64,000 bases of DNA from positions 368,845 to 432,844 of IMG/VR virus record IMGVR_UViG_3300010403_000705; one strand, written 5' to 3'. The translations under genes and the position numbers were made by a program. The notes beneath the pieces were generated by a model. The model saw only the letters and a program-made list of their open reading frames with translations. It had not been told where the DNA came from and did no database searches. Within the stretch, counting starts at the first letter, position 1, and each line of letters begins with the position of its first letter. Below, piece after piece: positions 14,661 to 38,579 of this stretch.

Positions 14661-14778
14661 GGAGCGATGGCGGAATTGATATACGCAAGCGGTAAAAAAC
14701 AGTGTATGATTTTTTTACCGCTTAATTAGTATAATACACTATACTAATTTATAGGTTTGACTCCTATTCGCTCCACCA
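14661..14778 (+). ncRNA. tRNA-shell RNA with two long complementary-loop hairpins
   Basis: GGAGCGA/TCGCTCC-ACCA, Leu-like D arm, T arm ATAGG-TTTGACT-CCTAT; 13-bp and 10-bp hairpins replace the anticodon and variable arms. Confidence 0.75.
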
Positions 14779-14798
14779 TAAATAAACATAAGGGCATA

Positions 14799-15026
14799 AT
14801 GAAAAAAATCACACTATTAGCAGTTATACTAGTAATAGGATGTCAGCAAGAACCAATACCTATAACCAAAGAAATTATACCTAGGAATACACATGTCGCA
14901 CCGTTTACATTGGAACAATGTGATGAAATACTTCAAAAAGCTGAAAATGAAACTTTTTTTCAAGGTATGCAAGCCCGCGCAACTTTAGCTACGGCTTGTT
15001 ACAATAGTTTAACAGTAAAAAGATAA
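14799..15026 (+). CDS. Small lipoprotein
   Basis: MKKITLLAVILVIGC lipobox. Confidence 0.65.
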   Translation: MKKITLLAVILVIGCQQEPIPITKEIIPRNTHVAPFTLEQCDEILQKAENETFFQGMQARATLATACYNSLTVKR

Positions 15027-15034
15027 TTATTTAG

Positions 15035-15418
15035 ATGTATAGCGTATCTCAATATCATAATGATAAATATGGTAATGTAATAGAAATTTCTATCGATAAG
15101 AATGGAATCTATGAAACACCTTTTAAAGCCATTGCGCAAGTAAAACTTATTAGAAGATTATGGTCAGAAAATCATAATGATAAAATTAGAATATTAATCA
15201 ATAAACAAGTTTTAACCATTAAAGAGATGGAAAAATGGTGCCTGGAGGAATACAAGCTTTTACCAAAGTGTAAAAATTGCGCTATTTGTTTAAAAGAAAG
15301 AATCTATACTCATCCTTTGTCTAAGACGAGCATTTTTTGCTCACAAAAATGCGCAGATGTAGATTATAATTACGAAATAGAAAAAATGAAAGATGAAGAA
15401 GAAATAGATTATTTATAG
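15035..15418 (+). CDS. Hypothetical zinc-finger protein
   Basis: CKNC...FCSQKC (TRASH-like). Confidence 0.6.
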   Translation: MYSVSQYHNDKYGNVIEISIDKNGIYETPFKAIAQVKLIRRLWSENHNDKIRILINKQVLTIKEMEKWCLEEYKLLPKCKNCAICLKERIYTHPLSKTSIFCSQKCADVDYNYEIEKMKDEEEIDYL

Positions 15419-15549
15419 CAATAATATGAATATATAGACATTGATATAGGTCTCTCAACGGACAGTCGATAATCTATTTAGGATAAAATATCCGCGGCAT
15501 ATTTCATCTGTAAAAAGATTGATAAAATACCTACAATAAGGAGAATATT

Positions 15550-15783
15550 ATGGTAGCAAAAAAATTAGTTGAAAAAAAGCCAGTAAAGAAATCTCCAAAA
15601 TCTGGAGCTACTGATACTGTAGTCAAGACTGTTAAAAAAGCCGTCAAAAAGGTGGCAGAAGCAGTAAAAAAAGTGTCTCCAGTAGTTGAAGCGGTTGACA
15701 CCATGTTAGACTCTGGTAGTTCTACCGATTCTGACAAAAATGACTCTGATAAAAAAGTTTCTTCGAAAAAAGAAACAGAATAA
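15550..15783 (+). CDS. Lysine-rich histone-H1-like small protein
   Basis: VKKAVKKV repeats; SD AAGGAG. Confidence 0.55.
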   Translation: MVAKKLVEKKPVKKSPKSGATDTVVKTVKKAVKKVAEAVKKVSPVVEAVDTMLDSGSSTDSDKNDSDKKVSSKKETE

Positions 15784-15811
15784 CGCAGATACAAAATAGT
15801 GTCTTTATTTT

Positions 15812-15842
15812 AAAAGAGAGGGTTATGTCCTCTCTTTTTTTT
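15812..15842 (+). terminator. Rho-independent terminator
   Basis: AAAAGAGAGG/CCTCTCTTTT stem followed by a T-tract. Confidence 0.65.
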
Positions 15843-15847
15843 ATTTA

Positions 15848-16459
15848 GTGGATTCCTTGATTATGCAAGTTTTAAAATTAATTGATAGTCATCCGCTCAA
15901 ATCAAGATTAAGTTATGAAGTGGGTTTTGGTGGCGCAGATGGACAAGTATTTCAACACTTAACTGATAAAGAAAAAGTAATTAAAATATCTGTAGTTTAT
16001 GAACATGCGATTCCAGTTGAAAAGCAAATTTCAAACACATTTCAGGTATTAGAATACTTAAAGTTATATAAACCAGACGCGTACGCGCATGTGTATGAAT
16101 TTGATATAATCAAAAATTATTATCGTGATACTATTTCAGGTGTGCAAAAATATATTGTATACTATTACATAATGGATAAATGCAATCCTTTAACAGAAGA
16201 TGAAAAAAAAGTATTTCACACAATTGTATCACATGAAGATAAATTAAAAAATAAAAGTCCCGTACCAGCATTACATGTTCTAGATGATTTAAGTATGGGT
16301 TTGGATTTTGATTTGTCAAAAATTATAAAATTCTGTCAAACAATTAATTGTTTGCCGATCCAGCATTTAGATATTCATCCGAGAAATATTATGAAAAATA
16401 AATTAGGAGATTTTTGTCTTATTGATTTTGATCGTTGTGAACTAAGAAAGGAAATATAA
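15848..16459 (+). CDS. Protein kinase/APH-like phosphotransferase
   Basis: GFGGADG loop, VIKI, HLDIHPRNIM, IDFD. Confidence 0.75.
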   Translation: MDSLIMQVLKLIDSHPLKSRLSYEVGFGGADGQVFQHLTDKEKVIKISVVYEHAIPVEKQISNTFQVLEYLKLYKPDAYAHVYEFDIIKNYYRDTISGVQKYIVYYYIMDKCNPLTEDEKKVFHTIVSHEDKLKNKSPVPALHVLDDLSMGLDFDLSKIIKFCQTINCLPIQHLDIHPRNIMKNKLGDFCLIDFDRCELRKEI

Positions 16460-16462
16460 ATA

Positions 16463-16771
16463 GTGTCAAAAATAGATAAATTACCAAAAGTAGATTTAGT
16501 GTTACTAAAACAATTAGTTACAGAACTAGAAAATAGTCTAGAGATTTGTGAGAAAATTAAAAATGACGACAATTTCGATCATACAAAATTCATAATTGAA
16601 ATGTCAAAATCCACCGGACTTATAGCTGGTATTATACAAGAAAGTTCAATGTTAATAGGTGACACCCAAACTATTGTAAAAGCAAGTCAGCAACCAAGTT
16701 CTAAGAACACCGACTTTATTGATAAGATATTATCGGGTGGATTAAAAGGTTCTGGCGGTTCAACAAATTAA
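16463..16771 (+). CDS. Hypothetical protein
   Basis: 102 aa ORF in the run. Confidence 0.65.
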   Translation: MSKIDKLPKVDLVLLKQLVTELENSLEICEKIKNDDNFDHTKFIIEMSKSTGLIAGIIQESSMLIGDTQTIVKASQQPSSKNTDFIDKILSGGLKGSGGSTN

Positions 16772-16788
16772 ATAAGGATTATAAAATA

Positions 16789-17076
16789 ATGAAAACATCT
16801 ACACGTAATGACGTAAAACAATTAGCTATTTCAATTGAATCATTAGCTCGTGAAATTCAAAATAAAATTGATTCAGGATCTGATGTGCTTGCTACAGCTA
16901 ATGAGCTGGTAAGAAATAATTTAACATTAGTTTTTGCTTTAGGAGAAGTATCGGCTGTTGAATATATGGAGTCTTCTAAGAAGAAAACGCCTTTAGTAAA
17001 AAAAGGATTAACTCGCAATTATAGCAATTATTATCGCGTAAGAGATAGTCTAACAGGTCGCTTTACTGCCAAATAA
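16789..17076 (+). CDS. Hypothetical protein
   Basis: 95 aa, C-terminal RDSLTGRF. Confidence 0.65.
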   Translation: MKTSTRNDVKQLAISIESLAREIQNKIDSGSDVLATANELVRNNLTLVFALGEVSAVEYMESSKKKTPLVKKGLTRNYSNYYRVRDSLTGRFTAK

Positions 17077-17094
17077 TGAGGGATTATTCAGAAG

Positions 17095-17505: not shown

Positions 17506-17507
17506 TT

Positions 17508-18300: not shown

Positions 18301-18304
18301 TTAT

Positions 18305-26155: not shown

Positions 26156-26291
26156 TAAAATGGCAAAATTATGGTTTTTAAAGTTTAAAAAAGATAATCG
26201 ATGTTAAAAAAATAACTAGGACTAAGTTATATCATTATCATTAATTATCTGTTTATCGTTGAAATTTTTGTTCAAATATAAGGAATGTATT

Positions 26292-27851
26292 ATGTCTTCA
26301 AAAAAGTTATTTTCTAATAAGTCTGTGGATGTTAAGTTAGTTAAACCAACTGATACAGTAAATAATGCTGGTGGTCAAGCCTATTCTTTAGATGATAAGG
26401 CAGCCTTGGCTCAATTAGCCATGACGGGATGTTTCAATGGTACTTATTATGTTTCTGATGAAGATCAATTAAAAAAAGTATTAGATTTAGCAAATAAATT
26501 GCCAGCAAAATATGTTGCACAACTAGCTGTTTATTCTCGTCAATATGGTTTAATGAAAGATATGCCAGCAGTTTTGGCAGCGGTAGTGGCAGGTAAGGAT
26601 TCAGATCTTTTATCAAAAATTTTTGATAAGGTAGTAGATTCCCCCAAAATGTTAAGAAATTTTGTACAAATTCTTCGTTCAGGAGTAGTAGGTCGCAAAT
26701 CTTTAGGCACTAGACCTAAGAAATTGGTTCAAAAATACCTTGAATCTTTAACTGACGAACAATTATTTATGGCTGATGTTGGAAACGACCCATCTTTACA
26801 AGATGTAATTAAATTGGTTCATCCTAAACCAACTACCAAACAACGTTCTGCTATGTTTGCATATCTCTTAAATAAAGAATATTCCCAGGATGATTTATCT
26901 TTATTAGTAAGACAATTTGAGGACTTTAAAAAGGACATGTCCAAGGACATTCCTAATGTACCTTTTCAAAAATTAACTGCTTTACCACTTACTTCTGATC
27001 ATTGGAAAAAAATTGCTTCAAATGCCACTTGGAATCAAATCAGACAAAATCTTAATACATTCGCTCGTCATAATGTCTTAAGTGATCAGGCATTATTGAA
27101 TCTTATATGTTCTAGAATAGAGGATAAGGAATTAGTTAAAAGAGCTAGAGTATTTCCTTATCAGCTTTTTACCACGTTTCAAAATTTGGAATCAAGTATA
27201 CCAACTAAGATCTCAGTTGCTTTACAAAAAGCTGCTGAACATGCATTGGAAAATATTCCAGAATTTAAAGGTAAAGTCTATGTTATGGTAGATACTTCTG
27301 GTTCTATGAGTTCGCCAGTGACTGGTAAACGTGGTACAGCTACTACAAAAATGTCTTGCATTGATGTTGCTGCTTTAGTGGCGGCAGCTATAATGAGAAA
27401 AAATTCTGATGTAGAAGTATTACCTTTTGATACTAAAGTTCATACACATAAACTGAATCCACTTGATTCGATTATGACTAATGCAAAGATTTTATCTGCT
27501 TTTGGTGGAGGAGGTACGAATTGTTCTCTTCCATTACAAGAATTGAATCGTAGAAAAGCCATGGGAGATTTAGTTATTTATGTAAGTGATAATGAATCTT
27601 GGGTTGATTCTAGCAGAGGAAAGGGGACTGCAACTATGAATGCTTGGGAAGTTTTTAAAGCTCGTAATAGAAATGCAAAATTAGTTTGTATTGATTTGAC
27701 ACCCAATACTTCTACACAAGTTTATTCTAAAAAAGACGTTCTTAACATCGGAGGTTTCTCAGATTCTGTATTTGAAGTGATAAATAAGTTCATGGAGTAC
27801 GGAAATGACGCAAATCTATGGATTAGAACAATTGAGCAGATTAAACTTTAA
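26292..27851 (+). CDS. Ro60/Rsr TROVE-vWA RNA-binding protein
   Basis: NNAGGQAY, LAQLAMTGCFNGTYY, ARVFPYQL, VDTSGSM MIDAS, GGGGTNCS, SDNESW, IGGFSD. Confidence 0.92.
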   Translation: MSSKKLFSNKSVDVKLVKPTDTVNNAGGQAYSLDDKAALAQLAMTGCFNGTYYVSDEDQLKKVLDLANKLPAKYVAQLAVYSRQYGLMKDMPAVLAAVVAGKDSDLLSKIFDKVVDSPKMLRNFVQILRSGVVGRKSLGTRPKKLVQKYLESLTDEQLFMADVGNDPSLQDVIKLVHPKPTTKQRSAMFAYLLNKEYSQDDLSLLVRQFEDFKKDMSKDIPNVPFQKLTALPLTSDHWKKIASNATWNQIRQNLNTFARHNVLSDQALLNLICSRIEDKELVKRARVFPYQLFTTFQNLESSIPTKISVALQKAAEHALENIPEFKGKVYVMVDTSGSMSSPVTGKRGTATTKMSCIDVAALVAAAIMRKNSDVEVLPFDTKVHTHKLNPLDSIMTNAKILSAFGGGGTNCSLPLQELNRRKAMGDLVIYVSDNESWVDSSRGKGTATMNAWEVFKARNRNAKLVCIDLTPNTSTQVYSKKDVLNIGGFSDSVFEVINKFMEYGNDANLWIRTIEQIKL

Positions 27852-32392: not shown

Positions 32393-32481
32393 ATCTTCAA
32401 TTATCCTGAAGAGATTAATAGAAGGATTAATTAGCAAACCATATTAACTTATGTTTAGGCTAGTAATTGCGGACAGTACAT

Positions 32482-32558
32482 GGAGGAGTAGCTCAGTGAA
32501 AGAGCACGATGCTATAAACATAACGAGGTCCTTGGTTCAAGTCCAAGCTCTTCCACCA
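32482..32558 (+). ncRNA. tRNA-like RNA, bulged anticodon stem (nominal anticodon ATA)
   Basis: Intact acceptor, D and T arms and CCA; anticodon arm CGATG-CTATAAA-CAT-AA-CG. Confidence 0.65.
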
Positions 32559-32573
32559 ATGATCTACAACAAA

Positions 32574-32680
32574 GGCATCCAGGGACACTGAACCCGCTTC
32601 GCAGGTGGGCAGTGCCACCCTCTCTGACAGAGGGGAACGTCACCAGTAACTAGACGTGACACGTTGGAGAGAAAATGTGA
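32574..32680 (+). ncRNA. GC-rich four-hairpin structured RNA
   Basis: CACTG..CCCGC/GTGGG..CAGTG; CCCTCT/AGAGGG; ACGTC/GACGT; CACGTT/AATGTG. Confidence 0.55.
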
Positions 32681-32738
32681 ATGTTAGACCCAAATCACTA
32701 CACATAATAAAATATGCATAAATTGATATATAAATATT

Positions 32739-32812
32739 GGGCTTGTAATTAAATGGGATAATAATTCGTTTGCACCGAATTTTTGAGAGTTCGATTCTCT
32801 CCGGGTCCACCA
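32739..32812 (+). tRNA. tRNA-Ala(TGC)
   Basis: G3:U70, loop TTTGCAC, CCA. Confidence 0.88.
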
Positions 32813-32833
32813 GAATTTAAGGTAAATTTCATT

Positions 32834-33034
32834 ATGAATGTGAAAGATTTGAAGAAAAAGTTAGATGGATTACCCGATAATCTTGAAGTAAAAATTGCTT
32901 ATGGTTGCCAGCTTTTTGAAACGGCAGGTAGTAAAGGTCATACTTTAGACGAGATTCAAGATGTAGTGATAGTGCACCATAACGATTGTATTGATGAAGT
33001 TTGGTTATATAATGAATATGCGTCTGAGGTTTAA
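32834..33034 (+). CDS. Hypothetical phage protein
   Basis: MNVKDLKKKLDGLPDNLEV, a common small phage family. Confidence 0.65.
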   Translation: MNVKDLKKKLDGLPDNLEVKIAYGCQLFETAGSKGHTLDEIQDVVIVHHNDCIDEVWLYNEYASEV

Positions 33035-33221
33035 GTTTTTAAAAATATGAATAAAACAGAACAGTCAGAATTATTAAAAATAAAAGAGTTTTTGGAATCT
33101 CTGTTAGAATCATTATCTAGAAAAGAATTGTTGTACTTTAAAGATAGATTTGAAAAATTAATGATTGAGAATAGTTATTCTGGTTTGTTAGATTCATTTA
33201 ACAAAGATACAAAAAAGTAAT

Positions 33222-33300
33222 GGTGATCGTAGTGTACTGGTTTTGTGCATGACTGACTGTGACTCAGTAGGTGCGGGTTCAAATCCCGTCGATCACCCCA
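33222..33300 (+). tRNA. tRNA-His(GTG)
   Basis: G-1:C73, loop CTGTGAC, CCA. Confidence 0.92.
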
Positions 33301-33324
33301 ATTAGCAATAGTACAGGTAAATTT

Positions 33325-33398
33325 GCCTCGTTCGTCTAATGGTAGGACAAAGCCCTTTCAAGGCTTGAACAGGAGATCGATACTCCTACGAGGTACCA
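33325..33398 (+). tRNA. tRNA-Glu(TTC)
   Basis: Loop CTTTCAA, T-loop ATCGATA, CCA. Confidence 0.9.
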
Positions 33399-33405
33399 AG
33401 TATAT

Positions 33406-33480
33406 TGTGGAGTAGAGCATCGGTAGCTTGCTTGGCTCATAACCAAGAGGTAGGAAGTTCAATTCTTCCCTCCGCAACCA
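33406..33480 (+). tRNA. tRNA-Met(CAT), initiator-like D arm
   Basis: Loop CTCATAA, CCA. Confidence 0.88.
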
Positions 33481-33500
33481 ATAGAAAGACAAACCGTAAA

Positions 33501-33725
33501 ATGAGAAAAACTGGTGTTATAGTATATTCAAATTCTTCAAAAGAAACCGTGGATTACTATTGTGAGGCTCTGAAAAAACATTTTGCAATGCCTCTGTATT
33601 TCGAAATTGAAATGATTAATAATCAATATTCAATTTTGTTTGATCCTTGGGACGGATATCTTGTAAATACTAGTGGATATGTTGATGAAATTAAAAAGTA
33701 TGTGACTAAAATACAAAAAGAATAA
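33501..33725 (+). CDS. Hypothetical protein
   Basis: Start moved to the ATG after the tRNA. Confidence 0.55.
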   Translation: MRKTGVIVYSNSSKETVDYYCEALKKHFAMPLYFEIEMINNQYSILFDPWDGYLVNTSGYVDEIKKYVTKIQKE

Positions 33726-33787
33726 TATGATGACTGTGGACAAAGTTATTATGAGGAACCATTATATGGTTGTGGTGGTTATTAAAA

Positions 33788-33952
33788 ATGTGTGATATTT
33801 GTAATGATGATTCTTTAAATGAAAGCTTCGTTGAAGAACAGAATTTTAAATTCTGGCAACGTTTGAAAAATAAATTAAGCGAAGAAGATTTAGAAAAGAT
33901 GTATCCTAATAAGAATAATGTTGTCATTAAACGTAATGATGATTATCAATAA
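33788..33952 (+). CDS. Small hypothetical protein
   Basis: MCDICN... Confidence 0.4.
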   Translation: MCDICNDDSLNESFVEEQNFKFWQRLKNKLSEEDLEKMYPNKNNVVIKRNDDYQ

Positions 33953-33953
33953 T

Positions 33954-34027
33954 TGGAATATCGTCCAACGGCAGGACAACGGGCTTTGAACCCGTGAATC
34001 TAGGTTCGAATCCTAGTATTCCAGCCA
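33954..34027 (+). tRNA. tRNA-Gln(TTG)
   Basis: U1-A72, loop CTTTGAA, G73, CCA. Confidence 0.93.
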
Positions 34028-34030
34028 ACT

Positions 34031-34246
34031 ATGAGTAGGCTTAAAAGGATAAATATGTCAATAAAAAATGCTGATGAATTGATTGATTTATTTAAAAATA
34101 AATTAAATAAACCATCATTGAAGAAAGACGTACAAATTCTTAAAGAAAGCATAAAGATTATATATGAAGATAAAAATTCAAACAATGAAATTAAAGAGAA
34201 AGCATTGTTAAGTCTACAATATTTACAAGAAAAAACAGAGAACTAA
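34031..34246 (+). CDS. Hypothetical protein
   Basis: 71 aa between RNA genes. Confidence 0.5.
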   Translation: MSRLKRINMSIKNADELIDLFKNKLNKPSLKKDVQILKESIKIIYEDKNSNNEIKEKALLSLQYLQEKTEN

Positions 34247-34255
34247 TTGTTCTTA

Positions 34256-34364
34256 AGCAAGAATAGTTTAATGGTAGAACGCTGGAGTCCATCCAGAAGC
34301 GGTACAAAAAGAATCCACGTGCACTGGGTAAAAAAATTCTTAGGTTCAAATCCTCCTTCTTGCT
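34256..34364 (+). ncRNA. tRNA-shell RNA with enlarged variable region
   Basis: AGCAAGAA/TTCTTGCT, D arm TAGTTTAATGGTAGAAC, CTGGA-GTCCA-TCCAG, ~45-nt insert, AGGTTCAAATCCT. Confidence 0.6.
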
Positions 34365-34365
34365 C

Positions 34366-34435
34366 TATGACGAATGCTAAAATGGGATTACATTTAATTT
34401 ACAAAAACATATCTCATTTAATTTTTGTCGTCATA
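34366..34435 (+). ncRNA. Hairpin RNA, Y-RNA candidate
   Basis: TATGACGA/TCGTCATA and AAATGGGAT/ATCTCATTT stems; 5' strand contains GACGAATG. Confidence 0.35.
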
Positions 34436-34441
34436 ATATTT

Positions 34442-34548
34442 GGGTACGTACCTCAAATATGGATGAGGATCGGAGCGGGGGCGAATTGGTAAAATATTAG
34501 CTAGTCCCGAGCACTCTAAAGTTGTTGGTTCAAATTCAATCGTATCCA
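34442..34548 (+). ncRNA. tRNA-shell RNA with extended bulged anticodon-position stem and G3:U70
   Basis: GGGTACG/CGTATCC-A, CCTC/GAGG D stem, GTTGG-TTCAAAT-TCAAT T arm; ~55-nt central domain. Confidence 0.65.
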
Positions 34549-34669
34549 CTTAGATTTTATGTTCCCTGAAAAAGTATACCCGTTAGTTTGGGCGGAGAAC
34601 ACTATAGCTGAATGCAGATAGGTTTACATCGGAAAAAAATAGACTTATCAAATTTTGTCAGCTTAATAT

Positions 34670-34744
34670 AGAGTAATAGTTTAATGTAAAGAATAGCCTC
34701 ATTAACAGAGGAAGATTTTGGTTTAAATCCAAATTACTCTACCA
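34670..34744 (+). ncRNA. Atypical tRNA (nominal anticodon TAA, short variable loop)
   Basis: AGAGTAA/TTACTCT-ACCA, loop ATTAACA, T-loop TTTAAAT. Confidence 0.6.
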
Positions 34745-34752
34745 CCTATAAT

Positions 34753-34838
34753 GCCGACGTTGAGCAGGTGGTGGGCTCAGTGCGCTGTAAACGCATATCC
34801 TTAAGGACTTGGAGGTTCGATTCCTCTCGGCGGCACCA
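34753..34838 (+). tRNA. tRNA-Tyr(GTA)
   Basis: Loop CTGTAAA, variable arm, CCA. Confidence 0.88.
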
Positions 34839-34964
34839 AGATAAAATTATTTTTATTTGGGGTATAATTAGGTATAACTATAACAAGTTGTAAGAACAAT
34901 ATTTAACTCACTACCGCAATTAAATATTGTACAGACTAAATCTAGCGGTGTTATTAGAGGTTTT

Positions 34965-35393
34965 ATGATAAAGATCAAGAAACTTGAAAAAATAGAAACC
35001 AATCAAATGGGTGATAATTATCTTGACCATTTAGTAACTGTTGATATAGATAGTATTACACATAGAGTTTGGGTAAGTTGTAGTGGTTCTCTAATGCGTA
35101 CCGAGAAGAAATCTTTAAAAGATGTAAGTAAGTTTATCAATGATAAATTAGAAAAGTCATTATATAATGATATCAGTTTTGAACATTGGTTAGGAAATCA
35201 AGGAGATTATGCTGCTCCGTATGTTGTGTTAAAAGCAGGCAATGTTGATAAGGTAGTAGATGATGAGTGTTTTTATCATGAATACCCACGTTTGATATTC
35301 ACTACTCCACCACCTCCTCCAGCAGAACCAAAACAGAAACCAACGAATACTATTAATGACGAAATTAAAAAATCAATTATTAATGTAACTTAA
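34965..35393 (+). CDS. Hypothetical protein with polyproline tract
   Basis: 142 aa; SD GAGG; TPPPPPAEP. Confidence 0.65.
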   Translation: MIKIKKLEKIETNQMGDNYLDHLVTVDIDSITHRVWVSCSGSLMRTEKKSLKDVSKFINDKLEKSLYNDISFEHWLGNQGDYAAPYVVLKAGNVDKVVDDECFYHEYPRLIFTTPPPPPAEPKQKPTNTINDEIKKSIINVT

Positions 35394-35399
35394 TGAAAA

Positions 35400-35428
35400 A
35401 AGTATGGTAGATTTTATCTACCATACTT
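35400..35428. terminator. Inverted repeat / terminator or processing stem
   Basis: AAGTATGGTAGA/TCTACCATACTT. Confidence 0.55.
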
Positions 35429-35435
35429 AATAAAA

Positions 35436-35508
35436 CGGGAATAAAGTGTAGCCTGGTTGCACACGTCGTTTGGGGCGATGTAGGGTGGTTCAAATCCAAT
35501 ATTCCCGA
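35436..35508 (+). tRNA. tRNA-Pro(TGG), 8/4-like
   Basis: CGGGAATA/TATTCCCG, loop TTTGGGG. Confidence 0.8.
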
Positions 35509-35509
35509 C

Positions 35510-35591
35510 TAGATAAAATATGGTGCGGTGACGCCTGTAAATAATTTCTAAAGAAAATTATTTATCCGTTGCAACTACGGTATTTTATCTA
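35510..35591 (+). ncRNA. Cloverleaf-like RNA
   Basis: 11-bp closing stem TAGATAAAATA/TATTTTATCTA enclosing three hairpins, the last CCGT-TGCAACT-ACGG (T-like). Confidence 0.5.
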
Positions 35592-35602
35592 AAAATTATT
35601 AT

Positions 35603-35705
35603 GCACATCTAAAAAGTCTCCAGCAGAACCCCAGGAGGCACGAATCTAAGGAGTAGTGGCAGTCGAATTAACGATAGATACGTTTGAACTTAGAATGTGT
35701 TGTGC
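35603..35705 (+). ncRNA. Multi-branch structured RNA
   Basis: GCACATCTAA/TTAGAATGTGT closing stem, GTCTCC/GGAGGC, ATCTA/TAGAT. Confidence 0.4.
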
Positions 35706-35717
35706 TTAATGATATTT

Positions 35718-35793
35718 CGGGAATGAGGTGTAACTTGGTTGCATGGGAGCTCTGGAAGCTTTTGGAGGCGTTCGAATCGCACATTCCCGACCA
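35718..35793 (+). tRNA. tRNA-Pro(TGG), C33/A37, 8/4-like
   Basis: CGGGAATG/CATTCCCG-ACCA, loop TCTGGAA. Confidence 0.75.
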
Positions 35794-35900
35794 GTAGAGA
35801 GATCGTATTAGCAGATAAAACTTTAGTACGAGTTAAAGGAATTAGTAATATATCTTAAATGATAAATGTTTGGCGGTGCAAGACCCGCCTCTCTACTCCA
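35794..35900 (+). ncRNA. tRNA-shell RNA ending in CCA
   Basis: GTAGAGA/TCTCTAC-TCCA, T-like GGCGG-TGCAAGAC-CCGCC, internal TCGTATTA/TAGTACGA hairpin. Confidence 0.6.
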
Positions 35901-35946
35901 AAACCTAAATTAAAAATCAACACAAACTCATAACAAGGAGCTTATA

Positions 35947-36204
35947 ATGTCAATTGTACTATGGATTCTATTTGGACTTGTAGTTGGTGTTATCGCTAAA
36001 TTATTGACTCCTGGTCGTGAACCTAGTGGATTTGTTTTAACTACTCTATTAGGTATTGGTGGTTCGTTATTGGGAGGATTTCTAGGAAAATTGATTGGTA
36101 TATATCCAACGTACCAATCAACGGGTGGATTTTTTATGGCTATTTTAGGAGCTGTCGTTATACTAGCGATATATAACTCTTTTCTATTTCGTAGAACTTT
36201 TTAA
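35947..36204 (+). CDS. GlsB/YeaQ/YmgE (transglycosylase-associated) membrane protein
   Basis: WILFGLVVGVIAKLLTPG...LGIGGSLLGG...AILGAVVIL. Confidence 0.88.
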   Translation: MSIVLWILFGLVVGVIAKLLTPGREPSGFVLTTLLGIGGSLLGGFLGKLIGIYPTYQSTGGFFMAILGAVVILAIYNSFLFRRTF

Positions 36205-36227
36205 TAAAAAAAGTATTTAAAAATCTT

Positions 36228-36300
36228 CAGAATATGTGGTCTAAGGGCAGGGCAGGTGGAAGTGTTCATCACGTTCAGGTTCGATTCCTGACATATTCTG
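36228..36300 (+). ncRNA. tRNA-like RNA with shrunken anticodon loop
   Basis: CAGAATATG/CATATTCTG, TCAGG-TTCGATT-CCTGA; loop of 4-6 nt; no CCA. Confidence 0.6.
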
Positions 36301-36306
36301 TTTTAT

Positions 36307-36382
36307 CGGGAAATGTTGTAATCTGGTAGCATCCGTGCTCAGGAAGCATGTAGTATGAGTTCAAATCTCGTTTTCCCGACCA
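36307..36382 (+). tRNA. tRNA-Pro(AGG), C33/A37
   Basis: CGGGAAA/TTTCCCG-ACCA, loop TCAGGAA. Confidence 0.8.
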
Positions 36383-36385
36383 TAT

Positions 36386-36494
36386 TGTAATTAAGTGTAA
36401 TGGTGCATCATCTCGATAATGATACGTACGTTCAATTCGTACACTTCCAGTCGGATATAGTAGAGAGAAAAAGGTTCGATTCCTTTAATTACAA
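36386..36494 (+). ncRNA. tRNA-shell RNA with a nested second T-arm
   Basis: TGTAATT/AATTACA, D arm, TCTC/GAGA enclosing GTACG-TTCAATT-CGTAC, outer AAAGG-TTCGATT-CCTTT. Confidence 0.65.
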
Positions 36495-36502
36495 TATACT
36501 AT

Positions 36503-36587
36503 GGATCTGTTCTCTAGCGGCAATGAGAAGAGCCTTTTAAGCTCTCGGCGAAAGCCTACGTGGGTTCGAGTCCCTCCAGATCCACCA
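36503..36587 (+). tRNA. tRNA-Lys(TTT) with long variable arm
   Basis: Loop CTTTTAA, variable stem GGC-GAAA-GCC, CCA. Confidence 0.85.
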
Positions 36588-36674
36588 CATCAAAACGATG
36601 TAGTAAGAAAATGAATATAGATTACGATTTTCTAGATATTATGATGTTACAATATTTGAATAGAGAGATAACAA

Positions 36675-36914
36675 ATGAAGTCAAGGTATATAAATAATTC
36701 TGCAATGAATAGTGCTGAATTTGGAAAATTCATGCAAAGTGAAGAAACTAAAGCCGCCATAGAAGAAGGATATAATATTATTAATATTAAAGGTTATACA
36801 AAAGGCAGTGGATCGGAAGTTTGTTATTGTGTTTCTATGAAAAAACCTTTTTTTAAATTTATTTGTGACGAGATAAATTCTACTATAAGACTATGGTTTA
36901 TGTTAGATAAATAA
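36675..36914 (+). CDS. Hypothetical protein
   Basis: 79 aa ORF. Confidence 0.55.
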   Translation: MKSRYINNSAMNSAEFGKFMQSEETKAAIEEGYNIINIKGYTKGSGSEVCYCVSMKKPFFKFICDEINSTIRLWFMLDK

Positions 36915-36920
36915 TTTTAT

Positions 36921-36995
36921 TCCTACCTAGCTCAATGGTAGAGCGTTCGGCTGTTAACCGAATGGTTCCAGGTTCGAGTCCTGGGGTAGGAGCCA
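36921..36995 (+). tRNA. tRNA-Asn(GTT)
   Basis: Canonical cloverleaf, G73, CCA. Confidence 0.95.
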
Positions 36996-37003
36996 ATAAA
37001 TAG

Positions 37004-37096
37004 CATGGAGGATACCAGCAGCGAGAGCAGCTTACCTTAAGTGGCAACTGGATAAAATCTTCCCAAAGTAGTTTGCTCAAACTACATAGATCCATG
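37004..37096 (+). ncRNA. Structured RNA between tRNAs
   Basis: CATGGA/TCCATG, CCAG/CTGG, GTAGTTT-GCTC-AAACTAC. Confidence 0.4.
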
Positions 37097-37125
37097 ATAT
37101 AACATGGTTATACTATTTATTCTAT

Positions 37126-37201
37126 GGTACGTTAGCTGGCTTGGTGCAGCGCCCGCCTGTTAAGCGGATGACGGAGGGTTCAATTCCCTCACGTATCGCC
37201 A
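37126..37201 (+). tRNA. tRNA-Asn(GTT), second type
   Basis: Loop CTGTTAA, G73, CCA. Confidence 0.88.
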
Positions 37202-37251
37202 TCATGATTTGTGAATAAAATATATTCATATAATGATATATAATTAGAAAT

Positions 37252-37326
37252 AGCTTCATCGTTCAATGGTTAGGACACTGGCTTGTCACGTCAGTAATGA
37301 GGGTTCGATTCCCTTTGGAGCTGCCA
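37252..37326 (+). tRNA. tRNA-Asp(GTC)
   Basis: Loop TTGTCAC, CCA. Confidence 0.92.
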
Positions 37327-37421
37327 ATAAACATAATTAGGTATGTAGTAATTTTATAATGTTTATTCCCAGAACTTATCACTAGTCAAGGCAAAGTATA
37401 GTAATAATAATTCATTACAAT

Positions 37422-37739
37422 ATGAATATTTCTCAATTATGCAAATTAGCAGACAAGTTTGAAGAAAAAATTAAATTAGCTACTGCTAGTAATAGTTGCT
37501 CACGTTGTAATGATATTCATTGTTGTATGAATTTTGGTAATTCTCATAGTCTAGATCAAGATAATAATGAGGCAAAATGTGAGGGTTACAAAAAATCTCC
37601 TGTAGGATCTCCGAGACAAAGATCTTTTTGTGCAAGACATTGTGCTATGAAAAAACAAAGAACTTCTATAGAAGTTGCAAATGATCCAGAATCTTGTATT
37701 AATAAAGGTTTAAGGCGTTGGAAATGCCGTTGTGGTTGA
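37422..37739 (+). CDS. DUF6321-like Cys-rich phage protein
   Basis: RQRSFCAR...DPESCINKGLRRWKC. Confidence 0.6.
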   Translation: MNISQLCKLADKFEEKIKLATASNSCSRCNDIHCCMNFGNSHSLDQDNNEAKCEGYKKSPVGSPRQRSFCARHCAMKKQRTSIEVANDPESCINKGLRRWKCRCG

Positions 37740-37769
37740 TATAAAACAACTACATAAATAGTGATATAT

Positions 37770-37845
37770 AGGTGTGTAGCAATTCGGCAATTGCACTTGC
37801 TTGTCAAGCAAGACCAAGCGGGATCGACACCCGTCATGCCTGCCA
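37770..37845 (+). tRNA. tRNA-Asp(GTC), second type
   Basis: Loop TTGTCAA, T-loop ATCGACA, CCA. Confidence 0.85.
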
Positions 37846-37848
37846 TAT

Positions 37849-37924
37849 AGTCCATTAGCTCAGGGGTTAGAGCGCCTGTCTTATAAACAGGAAGTCGTTG
37901 GTTCAATTCCAACATGGACTACCA
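37849..37924 (+). tRNA. tRNA-Ile(TAT)
   Basis: Loop CTTATAA, CCA. Confidence 0.9.
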
Positions 37925-38100
37925 TATTATACTAAAAACGCAAGATTGCGATACTATAAAATTGGAGTGTCAATCATGAAAAAAGTCATCAATAACTTGA
38001 TGTGTTCGCTATGCTATCTGCTACCATTACACAATACAAAATATTGTGTTTGTCCATGTCATTGGGATTAAATATTAGTACATAATAATATTTCATACAT

Positions 38101-38322
38101 ATGAAAAAAATGCAAGATTGTGATTTTGTCGTAGGTTTTAATAATAAAGGAATCTATGTTTTAAAAGATAGAAATTCATTTTCAGATGAAATTGCTATAA
38201 CATTTCAAGAATTTTTTCATAGATTATCTGATTATTCTTTATATTTAGAGCCAATAAAGATATTCGAGCCTCTAATACAATTTATGTATAAAAAAATTAT
38301 CTCGTTGAAATGTTTTTTATAA
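38101..38322 (+). CDS. Hypothetical protein with C-terminal F-x motif
   Basis: Ends KKIISLKCFL*. Confidence 0.6.
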   Translation: MKKMQDCDFVVGFNNKGIYVLKDRNSFSDEIAITFQEFFHRLSDYSLYLEPIKIFEPLIQFMYKKIISLKCFL

Positions 38323-38330
38323 AATAAAAT

Positions 38331-38579
38331 GCGATTGTGGTGAAAGAGGAAAACACACCATCAAAAATGTTAAAAGAAGATGGCATATTAAAAATGGCAT
38401 CATAGTATTTTTTAATATAAGCTTTATAAGGTGATGCCTAGGAAAGATATATTTATAAAATATGTAACGGGTTTGCGGAAGCACCGGACAGGGTTTTGAC
38501 AAGTTCTGTAGGGAAGCGCGTTTGCCTAATAGTTATAGTGTGATGTTATATACGGGTTCAAATCCCGTCAATCGCACCA
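38331..38579 (+). ncRNA. 249-nt tRNA-shell RNA with pseudoknotted insert
   Basis: GCGATTG/CAATCGC-ACCA, D arm, ACGGG-TTCAAAT-CCCGT; ~190-nt structured insert. Confidence 0.75.

What the first reader, a model, noticed from the sequence alone, without database searches (positions are those of the whole stretch)
14661..38579. Family of tRNA-shell ncRNAs: tRNA frame retained, anticodon/variable region swapped for cargo
Seen: about 10 loci keep a paired acceptor stem and a T-arm, most also a D-arm, and five end in CCA, yet none has a normal anticodon arm. They are 14661-14778, 32482-32558, 34256-34364, 34442-34548, 34670-34744, 35510-35591, 35794-35900, 36228-36300, 36386-36494 and 38331-38579. 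The replacements are mostly well paired, which argues against simple decay. Established: RNase P and the CCA-adding enzyme recognise the acceptor/T elbow rather than the anticodon, and this window encodes its own RNase P RNA and Ro60. Inference: the phage may use the tRNA frame as a processing and stability scaffold for functional RNAs, such as decoys for anticodon nucleases, aaRS or EF-Tu, or Ro60 partners.
Basis: partly seen in the sequence, partly recalled or inferred. Interest (0 to 1): 0.9.

Follow-up and report, generated by a model that had tools for sequence, protein, structure and literature searches.

The report
Non-decoding tRNA mimics in huge phage
Beside its ordinary tRNA genes, a 433-kb phage carries tRNA-shaped genes that cannot read codons; at least three are conserved in related phages, and one is a leucine-tRNA look-alike whose anticodon arm is base-paired to its own extra arm, so these viruses appear to use tRNA mimicry as a working tool.

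Summary
The observation largely holds. Eight of the ten loci are clearly tRNA-derived frames with an abnormal anticodon region. E7 is a looser frame, and E6 is mainly a long hairpin. They are not one family, and the "cargo" idea is mostly unsupported.

- **E1 (14661-14778)** is the main result. It belongs to a family of 21 distinct sequences in related huge phages and metagenomes. It has a tRNA-Leu-like body with every known bacterial leucine identity element invariant, no anticodon loop, and a covarying 6-bp kissing helix between the tip of a lengthened anticodon arm and the variable-arm loop. It usually sits 0-18 nt upstream of a conserved 127-aa zinc-finger gene.
- **E2 and E8** (probably E3 too) are conserved frames. 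Their anticodon stems covary, while the loops differ freely in length and sequence.
- **E5** is a near-normal tRNA.
- **E10** becomes a Thr(AGU)-like tRNA if a 174-nt insert is removed.
- **E4, E6, E7 and E9** have no homologues in any relative fetched. They may be recent insertions or debris, like the "enigmatic introns" reported in megaphage tRNAs.

Best reading: these are non-decoding tRNA mimics matured like tRNAs, and E1 is probably chargeable with leucine. Their biological role is unknown.

The parts
14661..14778 (+). E1: tRNA-Leu-derived non-decoding RNA. It has a 7-bp acceptor stem, a 3-bp D stem, an anticodon arm lengthened to about 15 bp with no 7-nt loop, a 10-bp variable arm, a T arm and ACCA. 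The anticodon-arm tip AGUGUAU pairs with the variable-arm loop AUACACU.
   Evidence: Fold z = -7.15. No Rfam match, not even tRNA at E<=10. 21 distinct homologues. 28 of 33 pairs compensatory. Kissing helix 92.9% paired with compensatory changes, and elbow pair 19:56 covaries. Leucine identity elements invariant.
15035..15418 (+). 127-aa Cys-rich protein with a MYM/TRASH-type zinc finger and an acidic C-terminal tail. It is the conserved gene partner of E1.
   Evidence: An E1 homologue lies 0-18 nt upstream of this gene in 18 of 22 loci and 256-795 nt upstream in the other 4, including this window. AF2 model pLDDT 89; no whole-fold match in the PDB, only a local zinc-finger match. No Pfam or PHROG family.
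32482..32558 (+). E2: member of a clade-wide tRNA-like family. The acceptor stem, D arm, T arm and ACCA are conserved; the anticodon stem covaries; the loop varies from about 6 to 19 nt. In this copy the loop is 9 nt, or 7 nt (anticodon AUA) with a 2-nt bulge in the stem.
   Evidence: ARAGORN Tyr(ata), Rfam 47.9 bits. 14-sequence alignment. 98.3% paired, 13 of 21 pairs compensatory, 0 of 500 shuffles reach the observed values.
34257..34364 (+). E3: tRNA frame with discriminator U73, a 5-nt 'anticodon' loop, a 41-nt insert at the variable region and a T stem of 3 of 5 pairs.
   Evidence: Rfam tRNA 38.7 bits with the insert. Frame similar to L020:19287-19370 and L026:18183-18314, whose centres differ by 11, 40 and 58 nt. 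Fold not better than shuffles.
34442..34548 (+). E4: intact acceptor stem (7/7), D arm (4 bp, GG in the loop) and T arm (5/5), with a 40-nt insert in place of the anticodon loop. No CCA.
   Evidence: Strict frame scan. No excision gives a loop with U33 (by inspection), and ARAGORN intron mode finds nothing. No homologue in any locus.
34670..34744 (+). E5: near-normal class I tRNA with loop AUUAACA (anticodon UAA, C37) and ACCA.
   Evidence: Rfam tRNA 44.9 bits with a full cloverleaf and one non-canonical pair in the anticodon stem. Not called by ARAGORN. Partial similarity to L011:8298-8372.
35510..35591 (+). E6: 82-nt structured element directly abutting tRNA-Pro(UGG). It has an 11-bp closing stem, a long AU hairpin and a 4-bp hairpin with loop UGCAACU. 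It is not a convincing tRNA frame.
   Evidence: Fold z = -5.43. No homologue.
35718..35793 (+). Loop UCUGGAA (C33, A37), T stem 3 of 5 pairs, ACCA. E7 follows directly.
   Evidence: Read from the sequence. Missed by ARAGORN and Rfam. The same loop occurs in Pro-type genes of relatives.
35794..35900 (+). E7: 7-bp acceptor-like stem, a long hairpin in place of the D arm, an AU-rich centre, a GC-rich T-like hairpin with an 8-nt loop, and UCCA.
   Evidence: Fold z = -3.32. Relaxed frame scan with NCCA. No homologue.
36229..36300 (+). E8: tRNA frame with a 5-bp anticodon stem and a 6-nt loop.
   Evidence: ARAGORN reports 'tRNA-???' with a 2-base anticodon. The homologue in L004 and L046 has an almost identical D region, T arm and acceptor stem, but a completely different, still paired anticodon stem and again a 6-nt loop.
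36386..36494 (+). E9: intact acceptor stem, D arm and T arm enclosing a 48-nt insert that itself holds a second perfect T-arm hairpin (36426-36442). It directly follows tRNA-Pro(AGG).
   Evidence: Strict frame scan. Two T-arm hairpins. No excision gives a canonical loop, and ARAGORN intron mode finds nothing. No homologue.
38331..38579 (+). E10: tRNA frame (G1-C72, C2-G71, A73, CCA) with a 174-nt insert at the 5' edge of the anticodon loop. Removing the insert leaves loop AUAGUGU, a Thr(AGU)-like tRNA.
   Evidence: Strict frame scan. Stem CCAUC/GAUGU plus a 5-nt variable region, read from the sequence. No group I intron or other Rfam family. Fold z = -1.9. No homologue.
47073..47440 (+). Phage-encoded RNase P RNA (bacterial class A), the likely 5'-end maturation enzyme for all these frames. 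An RNA ligase gene follows at 47473-48141.
   Evidence: Rfam RF00010, 247.5 bits, full length. PF09414 RNA_ligase.
26259..27851 (+). Ro60 (TROVE + vWA) gene. In all relatives the tRNA array follows it within about 4-6 kb.
   Evidence: Pfam. Homologues at 63-81% identity in many 250-510-kb contigs. Array synteny.

Best explanation
The ten loci are a mixed population of tRNA-derived genes, and part of it is a set of working, non-decoding tRNA mimics.

**Shown.**
- E1, E2 and E8 (probably E3) are kept by selection in related huge phages.
- Substitutions preserve the acceptor stem, D stem, T stem and anticodon stem.
- The position where an anticodon loop should be is either free to vary (E2, E8, E3) or sealed (E1).
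- E1 descends from a class II tRNA-Leu. It keeps U8, A14, G18, U54, U55, A58, A73 and a covarying 19:56 elbow pair, so it folds into the L-shape.
- E1's anticodon arm is about twice the normal length, and its tip forms a roughly 6-bp Watson-Crick helix with the loop of the long variable arm.

**Inferred.**
- The RNAs are cut out by RNase P (the phage has its own RNase P RNA) and by 3' processing to an encoded CCA.
- They persist as stable L-shaped RNAs and act through the acceptor/elbow half.
- E1 can probably be charged with leucine, because bacterial LeuRS needs only A73 and the elbow. It cannot pair with a codon, so it would work off the ribosome. It might be an aminoacyl donor, or a ligand or decoy for LeuRS, EF-Tu or a tRNA-directed defence enzyme, probably together with the zinc-finger protein encoded just downstream.

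**The remaining loci.** E4, E6, E7, E9 and E10 are lineage-specific products of insertion and recombination in a fast-turning-over array. Whether they function is open.
For: - **Frames far above chance:**
- **E1 homologues:** 21 distinct sequences found with model R1 in viral and metagenome loci.
- **E1 nested structure:** 33 pairs, 28 compensatory. With the pseudoknot and 19:56 included, the whole structure is 93% paired, with 0 of 500 shuffles as high and slid controls at 40-45%.
- **E1 kissing helix:** pairs 46:82 (GC 18, AU 3), 47:81 (UA 14, CG 6, AU 1) and 48:79 (AU 18, GC 3) have no unpaired cell. Every member has a contiguous loop-loop duplex of 4-8 bp, summing to 126 against a shuffled mean of 75 and maximum of 95, 0 of 3000. 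Ordinary class II tRNAs of the same phages reach at most 4 bp, mean 3.05.
- **E1 elbow:** pair 19:56 is G-C in 19 and A-U in 2.
- **E1 leucine identity:** all elements invariant in 21 of 21. The review PMC9976931 states that in E. coli A73 and the D/T-loop tertiary pairs are required, and that the anticodon and variable arm are not.
- **E1 origin:** R1's next-best hits, and hits to the D-arm pattern, are ordinary tRNA-Leu genes.
- **E1 gene context:** it abuts the zinc-finger gene.
- **E2:**
- **E8:**
- **E3 family:**
- **Processing and repair genes in the window:** RNase P RNA, RNA ligase, Ro60, HAD_SAK RNA-repair domain, SpoU methylase, two aaRS genes.
Against: - There are no expression, end-mapping or charging data, so maturation and leucylation are inferences.
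- The host and its LeuRS are unknown.
- The biological role is not established by anything here.
- Six of the ten loci have no homologue, so no covariation test is possible, and they may be inert.
- The window's E2 copy and E5 could still decode.
- E1's position right before a start codon also fits a purely cis-acting leader or processing signal.
- The loop-loop pairing is shown by covariation, not by probing. It could form between molecules rather than within one.
- Three of the 21 E1 sequences encode ACAA instead of ACCA.
Confidence: 0.55

Rival explanations
1. These are intron-containing tRNA genes, like the 'enigmatic introns' of Lak megaphage tRNAs. The inserts are removed from the transcript by an endonuclease plus the phage RNA ligase, or by self-splicing, and ordinary decoding tRNAs result.
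For: - In relatives, removing a 45-nt insert (L018:16210-16331) or a 26-nt insert (L020:16726-16828) gives sequences that ARAGORN calls tRNA-Pro(UGG). This matches their Pro-type bodies.
- E10 minus 174 nt gives a Thr(AGU)-like loop with Thr-type G1-C72 and C2-G71.
- L026 and L020 orthologues differ by a 47-nt central indel.
- An RNA ligase gene is in the window.
- Devoto et al. report such introns, one of which looks like a tRNA, as does the E9 insert.
Against: - No group I core or any Rfam family is found in the inserts.
- No bulge-helix-bulge geometry is seen at the junctions.
- No splicing endonuclease is found among about 60 ORFs scanned.
- For E3, E4, E7 and E9 no single excision yields a loop with U33 and R37, and ARAGORN intron mode finds nothing.
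- E2 and E8 have loops that are too short or variable, with nothing to excise.
- In E1 the 'extra' sequence forms conserved, covarying helices and a pseudoknot, so it is part of the mature fold.
Confidence: 0.15
2. E3, E4, E6, E7, E9 and E10 (and P2) are non-functional debris. They are tRNA duplicates recently broken by insertions or by illegitimate recombination between neighbouring tRNA genes, and have not yet been deleted.
For: - No homologue of these loci exists in the closest relatives (Ro60 79-81% identical), although the surrounding array is syntenic.
- E3, E4 and E9 fold no better than shuffled sequence.
- Inserts in E9 and L026 carry tRNA fragments.
- P2 and E3 have mismatched T stems.
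- The arrays hold many same-anticodon duplicates.
Against: - Damage is confined to the anticodon region, while the acceptor, D and T stems remain fully paired in E4, E9 and E10.
- The genome is otherwise tightly packed.
- Every relative carries its own set of such frames.
- This reading cannot apply to E1, E2 or E8, which covary.
Confidence: 0.35
3. This is the reader's model: the tRNA frame is a processing and stability scaffold, and the functional part is the inserted 'cargo', such as an antisense RNA, an aptamer or a protein-binding hairpin.
For: - E1's lengthened arm and variable arm are conserved in structure.
- Engineered tRNA scaffolds work this way (own knowledge).
Against: - In E2, E8 and E3 the replaced region is the least conserved part in both length and sequence.
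- Inserts in E4, E7, E9 and E10 are unique, unrepeated and without homologues.
- In E1 the two 'cargo' loops pair with each other rather than being displayed, and the conserved nucleotides are those of the tRNA core.
Confidence: 0.1
4. These are cis-acting punctuation marks. The tRNA-like folds are there only to be cut by RNase P and a 3' endonuclease, so that neighbouring small ORFs are released with defined, often leaderless, 5' ends, as in mitochondrial transcripts.
For: - E1 ends 0-18 nt before the start codon of the zinc-finger gene in 18 of 22 loci.
- The array is interspersed with about 11 small ORFs.
- E6, E7 and E9 directly abut Pro-type tRNAs.
- The phage encodes its own RNase P RNA.
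Against: - Ordinary tRNAs already flank most ORFs.
- E2 and E8 sit between tRNAs, not before ORFs.
- A cut site needs neither the invariant leucine identity set, nor the covarying 19:56 pair, nor a kissing helix.
- In 4 loci E1 is 256-795 nt from the gene.
Confidence: 0.2
5. These are Ro60 partners: the phage's equivalent of Y RNAs, which in bacteria contain a tRNA-like domain.
For: - Ro60 lies about 4.5 kb upstream of the array here and at a similar distance in all relatives.
- No canonical YrlA is detectable next to Ro60, so the partner RNA is unaccounted for.
- YrlA RNAs mimic the tRNA D arm, T arm and acceptor stem, and one is cut by RNase P.
Against: - Topology is opposite to YrlA: here the termini are at the acceptor end with CCA, whereas in YrlA they form the Ro60-binding stem.
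- The GNCGAAN0-1G motif is absent from the elements and not enriched in the window, with 6 found against 11 expected.
- E1 is 11.5 kb upstream of Ro60 and is linked to a different gene.
Confidence: 0.1

Closest known systems
Class II tRNA-Leu (bacterial)
   Same: E1 shares the 3-bp D stem with a GAAU..GG..UA loop, U8:A14, G18:U55, 19:56, U54:A58, A73-CCA, a long variable arm and a 7/5 acceptor/T branch. The E1 model's next-best hits are real tRNA-Leu genes.
   Different: E1 has no 7-nt anticodon loop and no Leu anticodon. Its anticodon arm is about 11-17 bp, usually with an internal loop. The arm's tip pairs with the variable-arm loop. It is 117-123 nt long, and Rfam's tRNA model does not detect it.
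Oversized 'pseudo-tRNAs' with enigmatic introns in Lak megaphages (Devoto et al., bioRxiv 10.1101/356790)
   Same: These are huge-phage tRNA arrays holding over-long tRNA genes with an insert in the anticodon region. One insert itself looks like a tRNA, and presence or absence differs between related genomes. E9, E10, L018:16210, L020:16726 and L026:18183 fit this description.
   Different: That report treats the inserts as introns to be excised. It describes no conserved non-decoding families, covariation or pseudoknot. E1, E2 and E8 cannot be turned into tRNAs by excision.
Bacterial Y RNAs of the YrlA type (Chen et al. 2014, PMC4201824)
   Same: They are non-coding RNAs that mimic the tRNA D arm, T arm and acceptor stem. 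They occur in genomes (including phages) that encode Ro60, and some are cut by RNase P and receive CCA.
   Different: YrlA has its ends in a Ro60-binding stem carrying GNCGAAN0-1G, a closed 'acceptor' stem-loop, and lies within 4 kb of rsr. The elements here have open acceptor ends with encoded CCA and lack the motif.
Stable RNAs C and D (rnaC, rnaD) in the phage T4 tRNA cluster (own knowledge, not checked here)
   Same: They are small stable RNAs of unknown function, encoded among phage tRNA genes and matured by the tRNA-processing machinery.
   Different: No sequence or structural relation was tested. No kissing-loop tRNA-Leu architecture is known for them.
Engineered tRNA scaffolds and viral tRNA-like RNAs (plant-virus TLS, gammaherpesvirus 68 TMER tRNA-like RNAs) (own knowledge)
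   Same: A tRNA fold is used for processing, stability or enzyme recognition rather than for decoding.
   Different: Scaffolds display a cargo at the anticodon arm, whereas E1 sequesters that end. TLS elements are 3' ends of genomes. None of these is a free-standing phage gene family.

Membership tests
Canonical decoding tRNA | 7-bp acceptor stem, D arm, and T arm with a T-loop | tested here: met
   Met for E1, E2, E4, E5, E8, E9 and E10. E3 has a T stem of 3 of 5 pairs. E7 has a variant 8-nt loop. E6 is not convincing.
Canonical decoding tRNA | 5-bp anticodon stem closing a 7-nt loop with U33 and a purine at 37 | tested here: not met
   - E1: no loop, the arm is extended.
- E3: 5-nt loop.
- E8: 6-nt loop.
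- E4, E9, E10: 40-174-nt inserts.
- E5: 7-nt loop with U33 but C37.
- E2: 7-nt loop only if a 2-nt bulge is accepted, and across the family the loop is about 6-19 nt.
tRNA-Leu (for E1) | Bacterial leucine identity set: A73 plus the elbow tertiary pairs U8:A14, G18:U55, G19:C56 and U54:A58 | tested here: met
   All are invariant in 21 of 21 sequences. Pair 19:56 is G-C in 19 and A-U in 2. The element list comes from PMC9976931.
tRNA-Leu (for E1) | Leucine anticodon in a 7-nt loop (decoding function) | tested here: not met
   No 7-nt loop is present. The apical loops vary and pair with the variable-arm loop.
tRNA-Leu (for E1) | Aminoacylation by LeuRS | not testable with these tools
   Needs an in vitro charging assay or acid-gel/periodate analysis.
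tRNA gene with a group I intron | Conserved group I catalytic core | tested here: not met
   No Intron_gpI or other ribozyme match, even at E<=10 on the isolated E10 region, nor at E<=1 across the array. The other inserts (26-48 nt) are too short.
tRNA gene with a group I intron | Excision restores a canonical anticodon loop | tested here: inconclusive
   E10 gives AUAGUGU, a Thr-AGU-like loop. Two relatives give Pro-UGG. E3, E4, E7 and E9 have no solution.
Archaeal/eukaryal-type tRNA intron | Bulge-helix-bulge motif at the exon-intron junctions | tested here: not met
   Inspection of the folds shows hairpins inserted at different loop positions (33/34, 36/37, 31/32) with no 3-nt bulge / 4-bp helix / 3-nt bulge arrangement.
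Archaeal/eukaryal-type tRNA intron | A splicing endonuclease encoded or available | tested here: inconclusive
   None found among about 60 window ORFs scanned with Pfam. The other roughly 370 kb of the genome and the host were not examined.
Y RNA / YrlA | Ro60-binding stem formed by the 5' and 3' ends, carrying the GNCGAAN0-1G motif | tested here: not met
   The ends form an acceptor stem with CCA. The motif is absent from the elements, with 6 in the window against 11 expected. No Rfam Y RNA hit near Ro60.
Y RNA / YrlA | Encoded within about 4 kb of Ro60 on the same strand | tested here: inconclusive
   All are on the same strand. E2 starts 4.6 kb after the end of Ro60, the others lie further away, and E1 is 11.5 kb upstream.
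Y RNA / YrlA | Physical binding to Ro60 | not testable with these tools
   Needs a pull-down or gel-shift assay.
tmRNA | tRNA-Ala-like domain plus a tag reading frame | tested here: not met
   ARAGORN finds no tmRNA. There is no G3:U70 pair. The only Rfam tmRNA signal is a 17-nt T-arm fragment.
tRNA pseudogene | No selective constraint: no conservation and no compensatory change | tested here: not met
   Not met for E1, E2 and E8. For E4, E6, E7, E9 and E10 the test is impossible because no homologue exists, so those remain inconclusive.

The most novel reading that the evidence does not exclude
E1 defines a new class of phage RNA: a tRNA-Leu mimic that is still matured and charged with leucine but is made translation-inert by a kissing helix that ties its lengthened anticodon arm to its variable arm. 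It would work with a dedicated zinc-finger protein off the ribosome. It might supply Leu for a non-ribosomal transfer, or bait LeuRS, EF-Tu or a tRNA-directed host defence. E2 and E8 would be simpler members of the same strategy, in which huge phages keep a repertoire of anticodon-less tRNA mimics.
Probability: 0.3. Interest if true: 0.85.

Novelty: new variant of a known kind. Interest (0 to 1): 0.75.

Why it matters
- Huge phages are known to carry many 'tRNAs of unknown isotype' and 'enigmatic introns', usually written off as annotation noise.
- This analysis shows that at least part of that noise is selected. These are tRNA-shaped RNAs that have given up decoding while keeping the half of the molecule that processing enzymes, synthetases and many defence and repair proteins recognise.
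- E1 gives a concrete, testable object: a defined 118-nt RNA, a defined tertiary contact supported by covariation, a predicted enzyme (LeuRS) and a genetically linked protein.
- If E1 is charged yet cannot decode, it would be a natural example of aminoacyl-tRNA mimicry used outside translation by a virus.
- It would also give a handle on how phages manipulate the tRNA-centred conflict with their hosts.
- The work supplies families missing from Rfam. It also warns that tRNA counts in huge-phage genomes mix decoders, mimics and debris.

Tried and rejected
- **Group I intron in E10.** No Rfam match, even on the isolated region.
- **ARAGORN intron mode.** It proposes 'tRNA-Stop(tta) with a 22-nt intron' for E1 and 'tRNA-Gly(gcc) with a 160-nt intron' for E10. 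I rejected the E1 call because it cuts through a covarying helix. I rejected the E10 call because it needs an odd 17-nt variable arm, whereas a 5-nt variable region gives a cleaner Thr-like solution.
- **ARAGORN splice points for the two relatives' Pro genes.** These were also offset. Manual excision gives Pro(UGG).
- **Bulge-helix-bulge introns.** Not seen.
- **YrlA/Y RNA.** No hit and no motif.
- **A mobile repeated insert.** The inserts have no second copy in the window.
- **Close relatives in GenBank phages.** None, only generic tRNA hits.
- **Protein 39201-40112 as an anchor.** It is an orphan.
- **Homologues of E4, E5, E6, E7, E9 and E10.** BLAST, fuzzy matching and closer Ro60 relatives all found none.
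- **Kissing loops in the other elements.** None found.
- **A trans or long-range pairing between E8 and E9.** E8's loop (UGGAAGU) is complementary to the 7 nt after E9's inner T arm (ACUUCCA). The chance is roughly 1% in that span, but it cannot be tested because L004 has no E9.
- **Fold of the zinc-finger protein.** Confident model but no informative PDB match.
- **D-arm pattern scan of viral contigs.** Too unspecific. It returned ordinary tRNA-Leu genes, which was nevertheless useful for showing E1's origin.
- **GC-richer spacers in the array** (32560-32700, 35600-35719, 36996-37125). Not significantly structured.

Full report
**Setting**

The window is part of IMGVR_UViG_3300010403_000705, a 432,844-bp phage contig with about 30% G+C. 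Almost all genes are on the + strand.

It is rich in translation and RNA-repair genes:
- a class II Asp/Asn/Lys-type aaRS and a Glu/Gln-type aaRS, Ro60, and EF-G
- a SpoU methylase, a NUDIX hydrolase and a HAD domain of RNA-repair proteins
- an RNA ligase, a CYTH domain, PARG and ADP-ribosylglycohydrolase
- a full-length class A RNase P RNA at 47073-47440

ARAGORN finds 24 tRNAs, 20 of them in an array at 32317-38961. GenBank phages hold no close relative. Ro60 has hundreds of homologues at 63-81% identity on contigs of 250-510 kb. In those contigs a syntenic tRNA array follows Ro60, as it does here.

I scanned for a fully paired T stem, a T-loop-like 7-nt loop and a fully paired 7-bp acceptor stem. 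This found 31 frames on the + strand, 3 on the - strand, and 3.5 on average in shuffles. GC-containing T-arm hairpins number 22 on the + strand, every one inside a tRNA or a listed locus, against 2 on the - strand.

- E1, E2, E4, E5, E8, E9 and E10 pass the strict test.
- E3 is a full-length Rfam tRNA match with a large insert.
- E7 passes a relaxed test with an 8-nt T-like loop and NCCA.
- E6 is essentially a long hairpin.
- E5 is a near-normal cloverleaf at 44.9 bits, and both tools call E2 a tRNA.

**E1 is a conserved tRNA-Leu mimic with an internal kissing helix**

E1 folds far better than shuffled sequence (z = -7.15). It matches nothing in Rfam, not even the tRNA model.

*Homologues.* One syntenic homologue (L018:1522-1638) already showed nine compensatory double changes in the acceptor, D and T stems. 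A covariance model built from the pair found homologues in seven more viral contigs. It also found one in all 16 additional loci fetched through the neighbouring protein. That makes 21 distinct sequences of 117-123 nt.

*Nested structure.* RNAalifold predicts 33 nested pairs, 28 of them with compensatory changes.

*tRNA-Leu origin.* The architecture is a 7-bp acceptor stem, U8-G9, a 3-bp D stem with a GAAU..GG..UA loop, a long variable arm, a T arm and ACCA. This is the body of a class II tRNA-Leu. The model's next-best hits, and hits to a D-arm pattern in the viral collection, are ordinary 77-87-nt tRNA-Leu genes.

*The anticodon end.* In place of the anticodon stem-loop there is an arm of roughly 11-17 bp, usually with an internal loop. 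It is capped by a loop containing GUGYAU or a variant.

*The kissing helix.* That cap is complementary to the loop of the variable arm in every member, and the two change together. Observed pairs include GUGUAU/AUACAC, GUGUG/CACAC, GUGCA/UGCAC, GUGAAU/AUUCAC, UACAAU/AUUGUA, GUAUAAU/AUUAUAC and GGUAUGU/ACAUACC.
- The summed contiguous Watson-Crick length is 126, against a shuffled mean of 75 and maximum of 95 (0 of 3000).
- Ordinary class II tRNAs of the same phages reach at most 4 bp.
- Written as a pseudoknot on the 21-sequence alignment, the helix is 92.9% paired. Three central pairs have no unpaired cell and carry G-C/A-U or U-A/C-G exchanges.
- No other element in the window shows such a contact.

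*The core.* The elbow pair 19:56 is G-C in 19 sequences and A-U in the window and its nearest relative. U8, A14, G18, U54, U55, A58 and A73 are invariant. According to the identity review PMC9976931, E. coli LeuRS requires exactly A73 and these D/T-loop tertiary pairs. It does not need the anticodon or the variable arm, and truncated tRNA-Leu lacking those arms is still charged.

E1 therefore keeps all that is known to be needed for RNase P, CCA and LeuRS recognition, while its decoding end is removed and tied back. Leucylation is an inference, not a result.

**E1 has a gene partner**

E1 lies after a NUDIX gene and before a conserved 127-aa protein (15035-15418).
- In 18 of 22 loci the RNA's CCA end is 0-18 nt from that gene's start codon. 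In 4 loci, including this window, other sequence of 256-795 nt has been inserted. In this window the inserted sequence is a small lipoprotein-like ORF.
- The protein gives a confident model (pLDDT 89). It resembles solved structures only locally, in a MYM/TRASH-type zinc finger.
- It has no Pfam or PHROG family.

This linkage fits an RNA-protein pair. It equally fits a cis-acting leader or processing signal.

**E2, E8 and E3: conserved frame, free anticodon loop**

*E2.* It has homologues at the start of the array in at least 12 related contigs. Across 14 sequences, 98.3% of cells pair, and 13 of 21 pairs have compensatory changes, including all five anticodon-stem pairs. No shuffle out of 500 reaches the observed values.

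The D arm and the T-loop core are nearly invariant. The sequence between the anticodon-stem strands ranges from about 6 to 19 nt. In several phages it is a mini-hairpin capped by a GNRA-type tetraloop. Decoding is therefore not the conserved property of the family. The window copy can, however, be drawn with a 7-nt CUAUAAA loop.

*E8.* Its homologue in L004 and L046 has a nearly identical D region and T arm, and an acceptor stem with one compensatory pair. The anticodon stem is entirely different but still paired, and the loop is again 6 nt.

*E3.* It shares its frame and a GGUAAAA-containing extra arm with L020:19287 and L026:18183. Their centres differ by 11, 40 and 58 nt, and the L026 insert contains a T-arm-like hairpin.

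**The remaining loci**

- **E4, E9, E10.** They have perfectly paired acceptor, D and T stems around inserts of 40, 48 and 174 nt.
- **E10.** The flanking stem CCAUC/GAUGU plus a 5-nt variable region leaves the loop AUAGUGU if the insert is removed. That gives a Thr(AGU)-like tRNA with Thr-type G1-C72 and C2-G71. No canonical Thr tRNA is present in the window. The insert matches no intron or ribozyme family.
- **E4 and E9.** No excision gives U33 and R37, and ARAGORN's intron mode finds nothing. E9's insert contains a second perfect T arm.
- **E6, E7, E9.** Each directly follows a Pro-type tRNA: 35436-35509, 35718-35793 and 36307-36382 respectively. The same arrangement is seen in L003.
- **Homologues.** None of E4, E5 (beyond partial similarity), E6, E7, E9 or E10 has a homologue, even in contigs whose Ro60 is 79-81% identical and whose arrays are syntenic. 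The inserts are not repeated in the window.
- **Relatives.** They carry their own, different over-long frames. Two of these become clean tRNA-Pro(UGG) genes when a 45-nt or a 26-nt insert is removed, at different loop positions.

This matches the 'enigmatic introns' and tRNA-in-tRNA inserts described for Lak megaphages. Whether such inserts are spliced, tolerated or simply recent damage cannot be decided from sequence.

**Mechanism and rivals**

*Best supported.* Part of the set (E1, E2, E8, probably E3) consists of functional tRNA mimics. They are matured like tRNAs and work through the acceptor/elbow half. E1 is probably leucylatable yet translation-inert.

*The cargo model.* It fits poorly because the replaced regions are the least conserved parts. 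In E1 the two loops bind each other rather than being displayed.

*The Ro60-partner model.* It fails the defining features of Y RNAs. It is not excluded as a looser substrate relationship.

*The punctuation model.* It explains E1's position but not its conserved identity set and pseudoknot.

*The intron model.* It is plausible for E10 and demonstrated in silico for two relatives. It is incompatible with E1, E2 and E8.

*The debris model.* It remains a live option for E4, E6, E7 and E9.

**Novelty**

tRNA mimicry and odd tRNAs in huge phages are known. A covariation-supported family of tRNA-Leu mimics with an anticodon-arm/variable-arm kissing helix and a linked zinc-finger gene is not in Rfam, and I found no description of it in the literature searched. 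Clade-wide frames with free anticodon loops are likewise undescribed there. I rate this a new variant of a known kind, with high interest for E1 and moderate interest for the rest.

Noticed in passing
window 34606-34665: The 3' part of the spacer before E5 and tRNA-Tyr is conserved at 78-84% identity in at least seven related contigs, usually just upstream of tRNA-Tyr or after tRNA-Cys. It is not significantly structured. It may be a promoter or other signal.
   Followed up: partly
window 35718-35793: An extra Pro-type tRNA gene is missed by both ARAGORN and Rfam. Its loop is UCUGGAA (C33 instead of U33, A37), two T-stem pairs are mismatched, and it ends in ACCA. The same unusual loop occurs in Pro-type genes with variant UGCAAAU T-loops in relatives (L020:17416, L026:17026).
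   Followed up: partly
window 36503-36587: The gene called tRNA-Lys(UUU) is 85 nt long and has a 14-nt extra arm (GGC-GAAA-GCC). This is a class II-like body with a Lys anticodon, so a possible isotype mismatch.
   Followed up: no
window 36257-36263 and 36443-36449: E8's 'anticodon' loop (UGGAAGU) is perfectly complementary to the 7 nt that follow the inner T arm of E9 (ACUUCCA). Together they would form an acceptor-like stem spanning tRNA-Pro(AGG). This could be chance (about 1% in that span).
   Followed up: partly
window 14799-15026: A small ORF with a lipoprotein-type signal peptide (MKKITLLAVILVIGC...) sits between E1 and the zinc-finger gene. In most relatives the RNA abuts the zinc-finger gene directly.
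   Followed up: partly
window 47073-48141: The RNase P RNA gene is immediately followed by an RNA ligase gene (PF09414), and a CYTH-domain gene lies at 49557-50093. In relative L047 an RNA ligase lies just after Ro60.
   Followed up: no
window 1207-1722, 14070-14624, 29320-30150, 53190-54104, 60341-63135: A dense set of conflict and repair genes: HAD domain of 'Swiss Army Knife' RNA-repair proteins, NUDIX, microbial PARG, ADP-ribosylglycohydrolase and two R2K ATP-grasp enzymes. This suggests ADP-ribose and RNA-end chemistry alongside the tRNA genes.
   Followed up: no
relatives: L003:15198-15264, L004:16904-16970, L017:8146-8212, L020:17884-17951: A conserved 67-68-nt tRNA-like gene has a reduced D region. 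In L003, L004 and L017 the loop is CUCCAAA (Trp-CCA-like); in L020 the loop is different. ARAGORN does not call it. No copy was seen in this window.
   Followed up: no
relatives: L003:16350-16460, L018:16913-17032, L006:16382-16516: A family of tRNA frames has a 45-60-nt insert inside the D loop (GCUC AGU ... GGUA GAGC) and a very short 'anticodon' loop. In L003 it directly follows tRNA-Pro.
   Followed up: no
window 30207-30551 and 45745-46323: A LAGLIDADG-like ORF and an HNH endonuclease carrying a zf-FCS finger are present. These are homing-endonuclease-type genes in a genome whose tRNA genes carry inserts.
   Followed up: no
window array 32317-38961 and relatives: There are multiple same-anticodon copies: Asn-GUU x2-3, Asp-GUC x2 and Pro x3-5. 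This indicates frequent duplication in the array.
   Followed up: no
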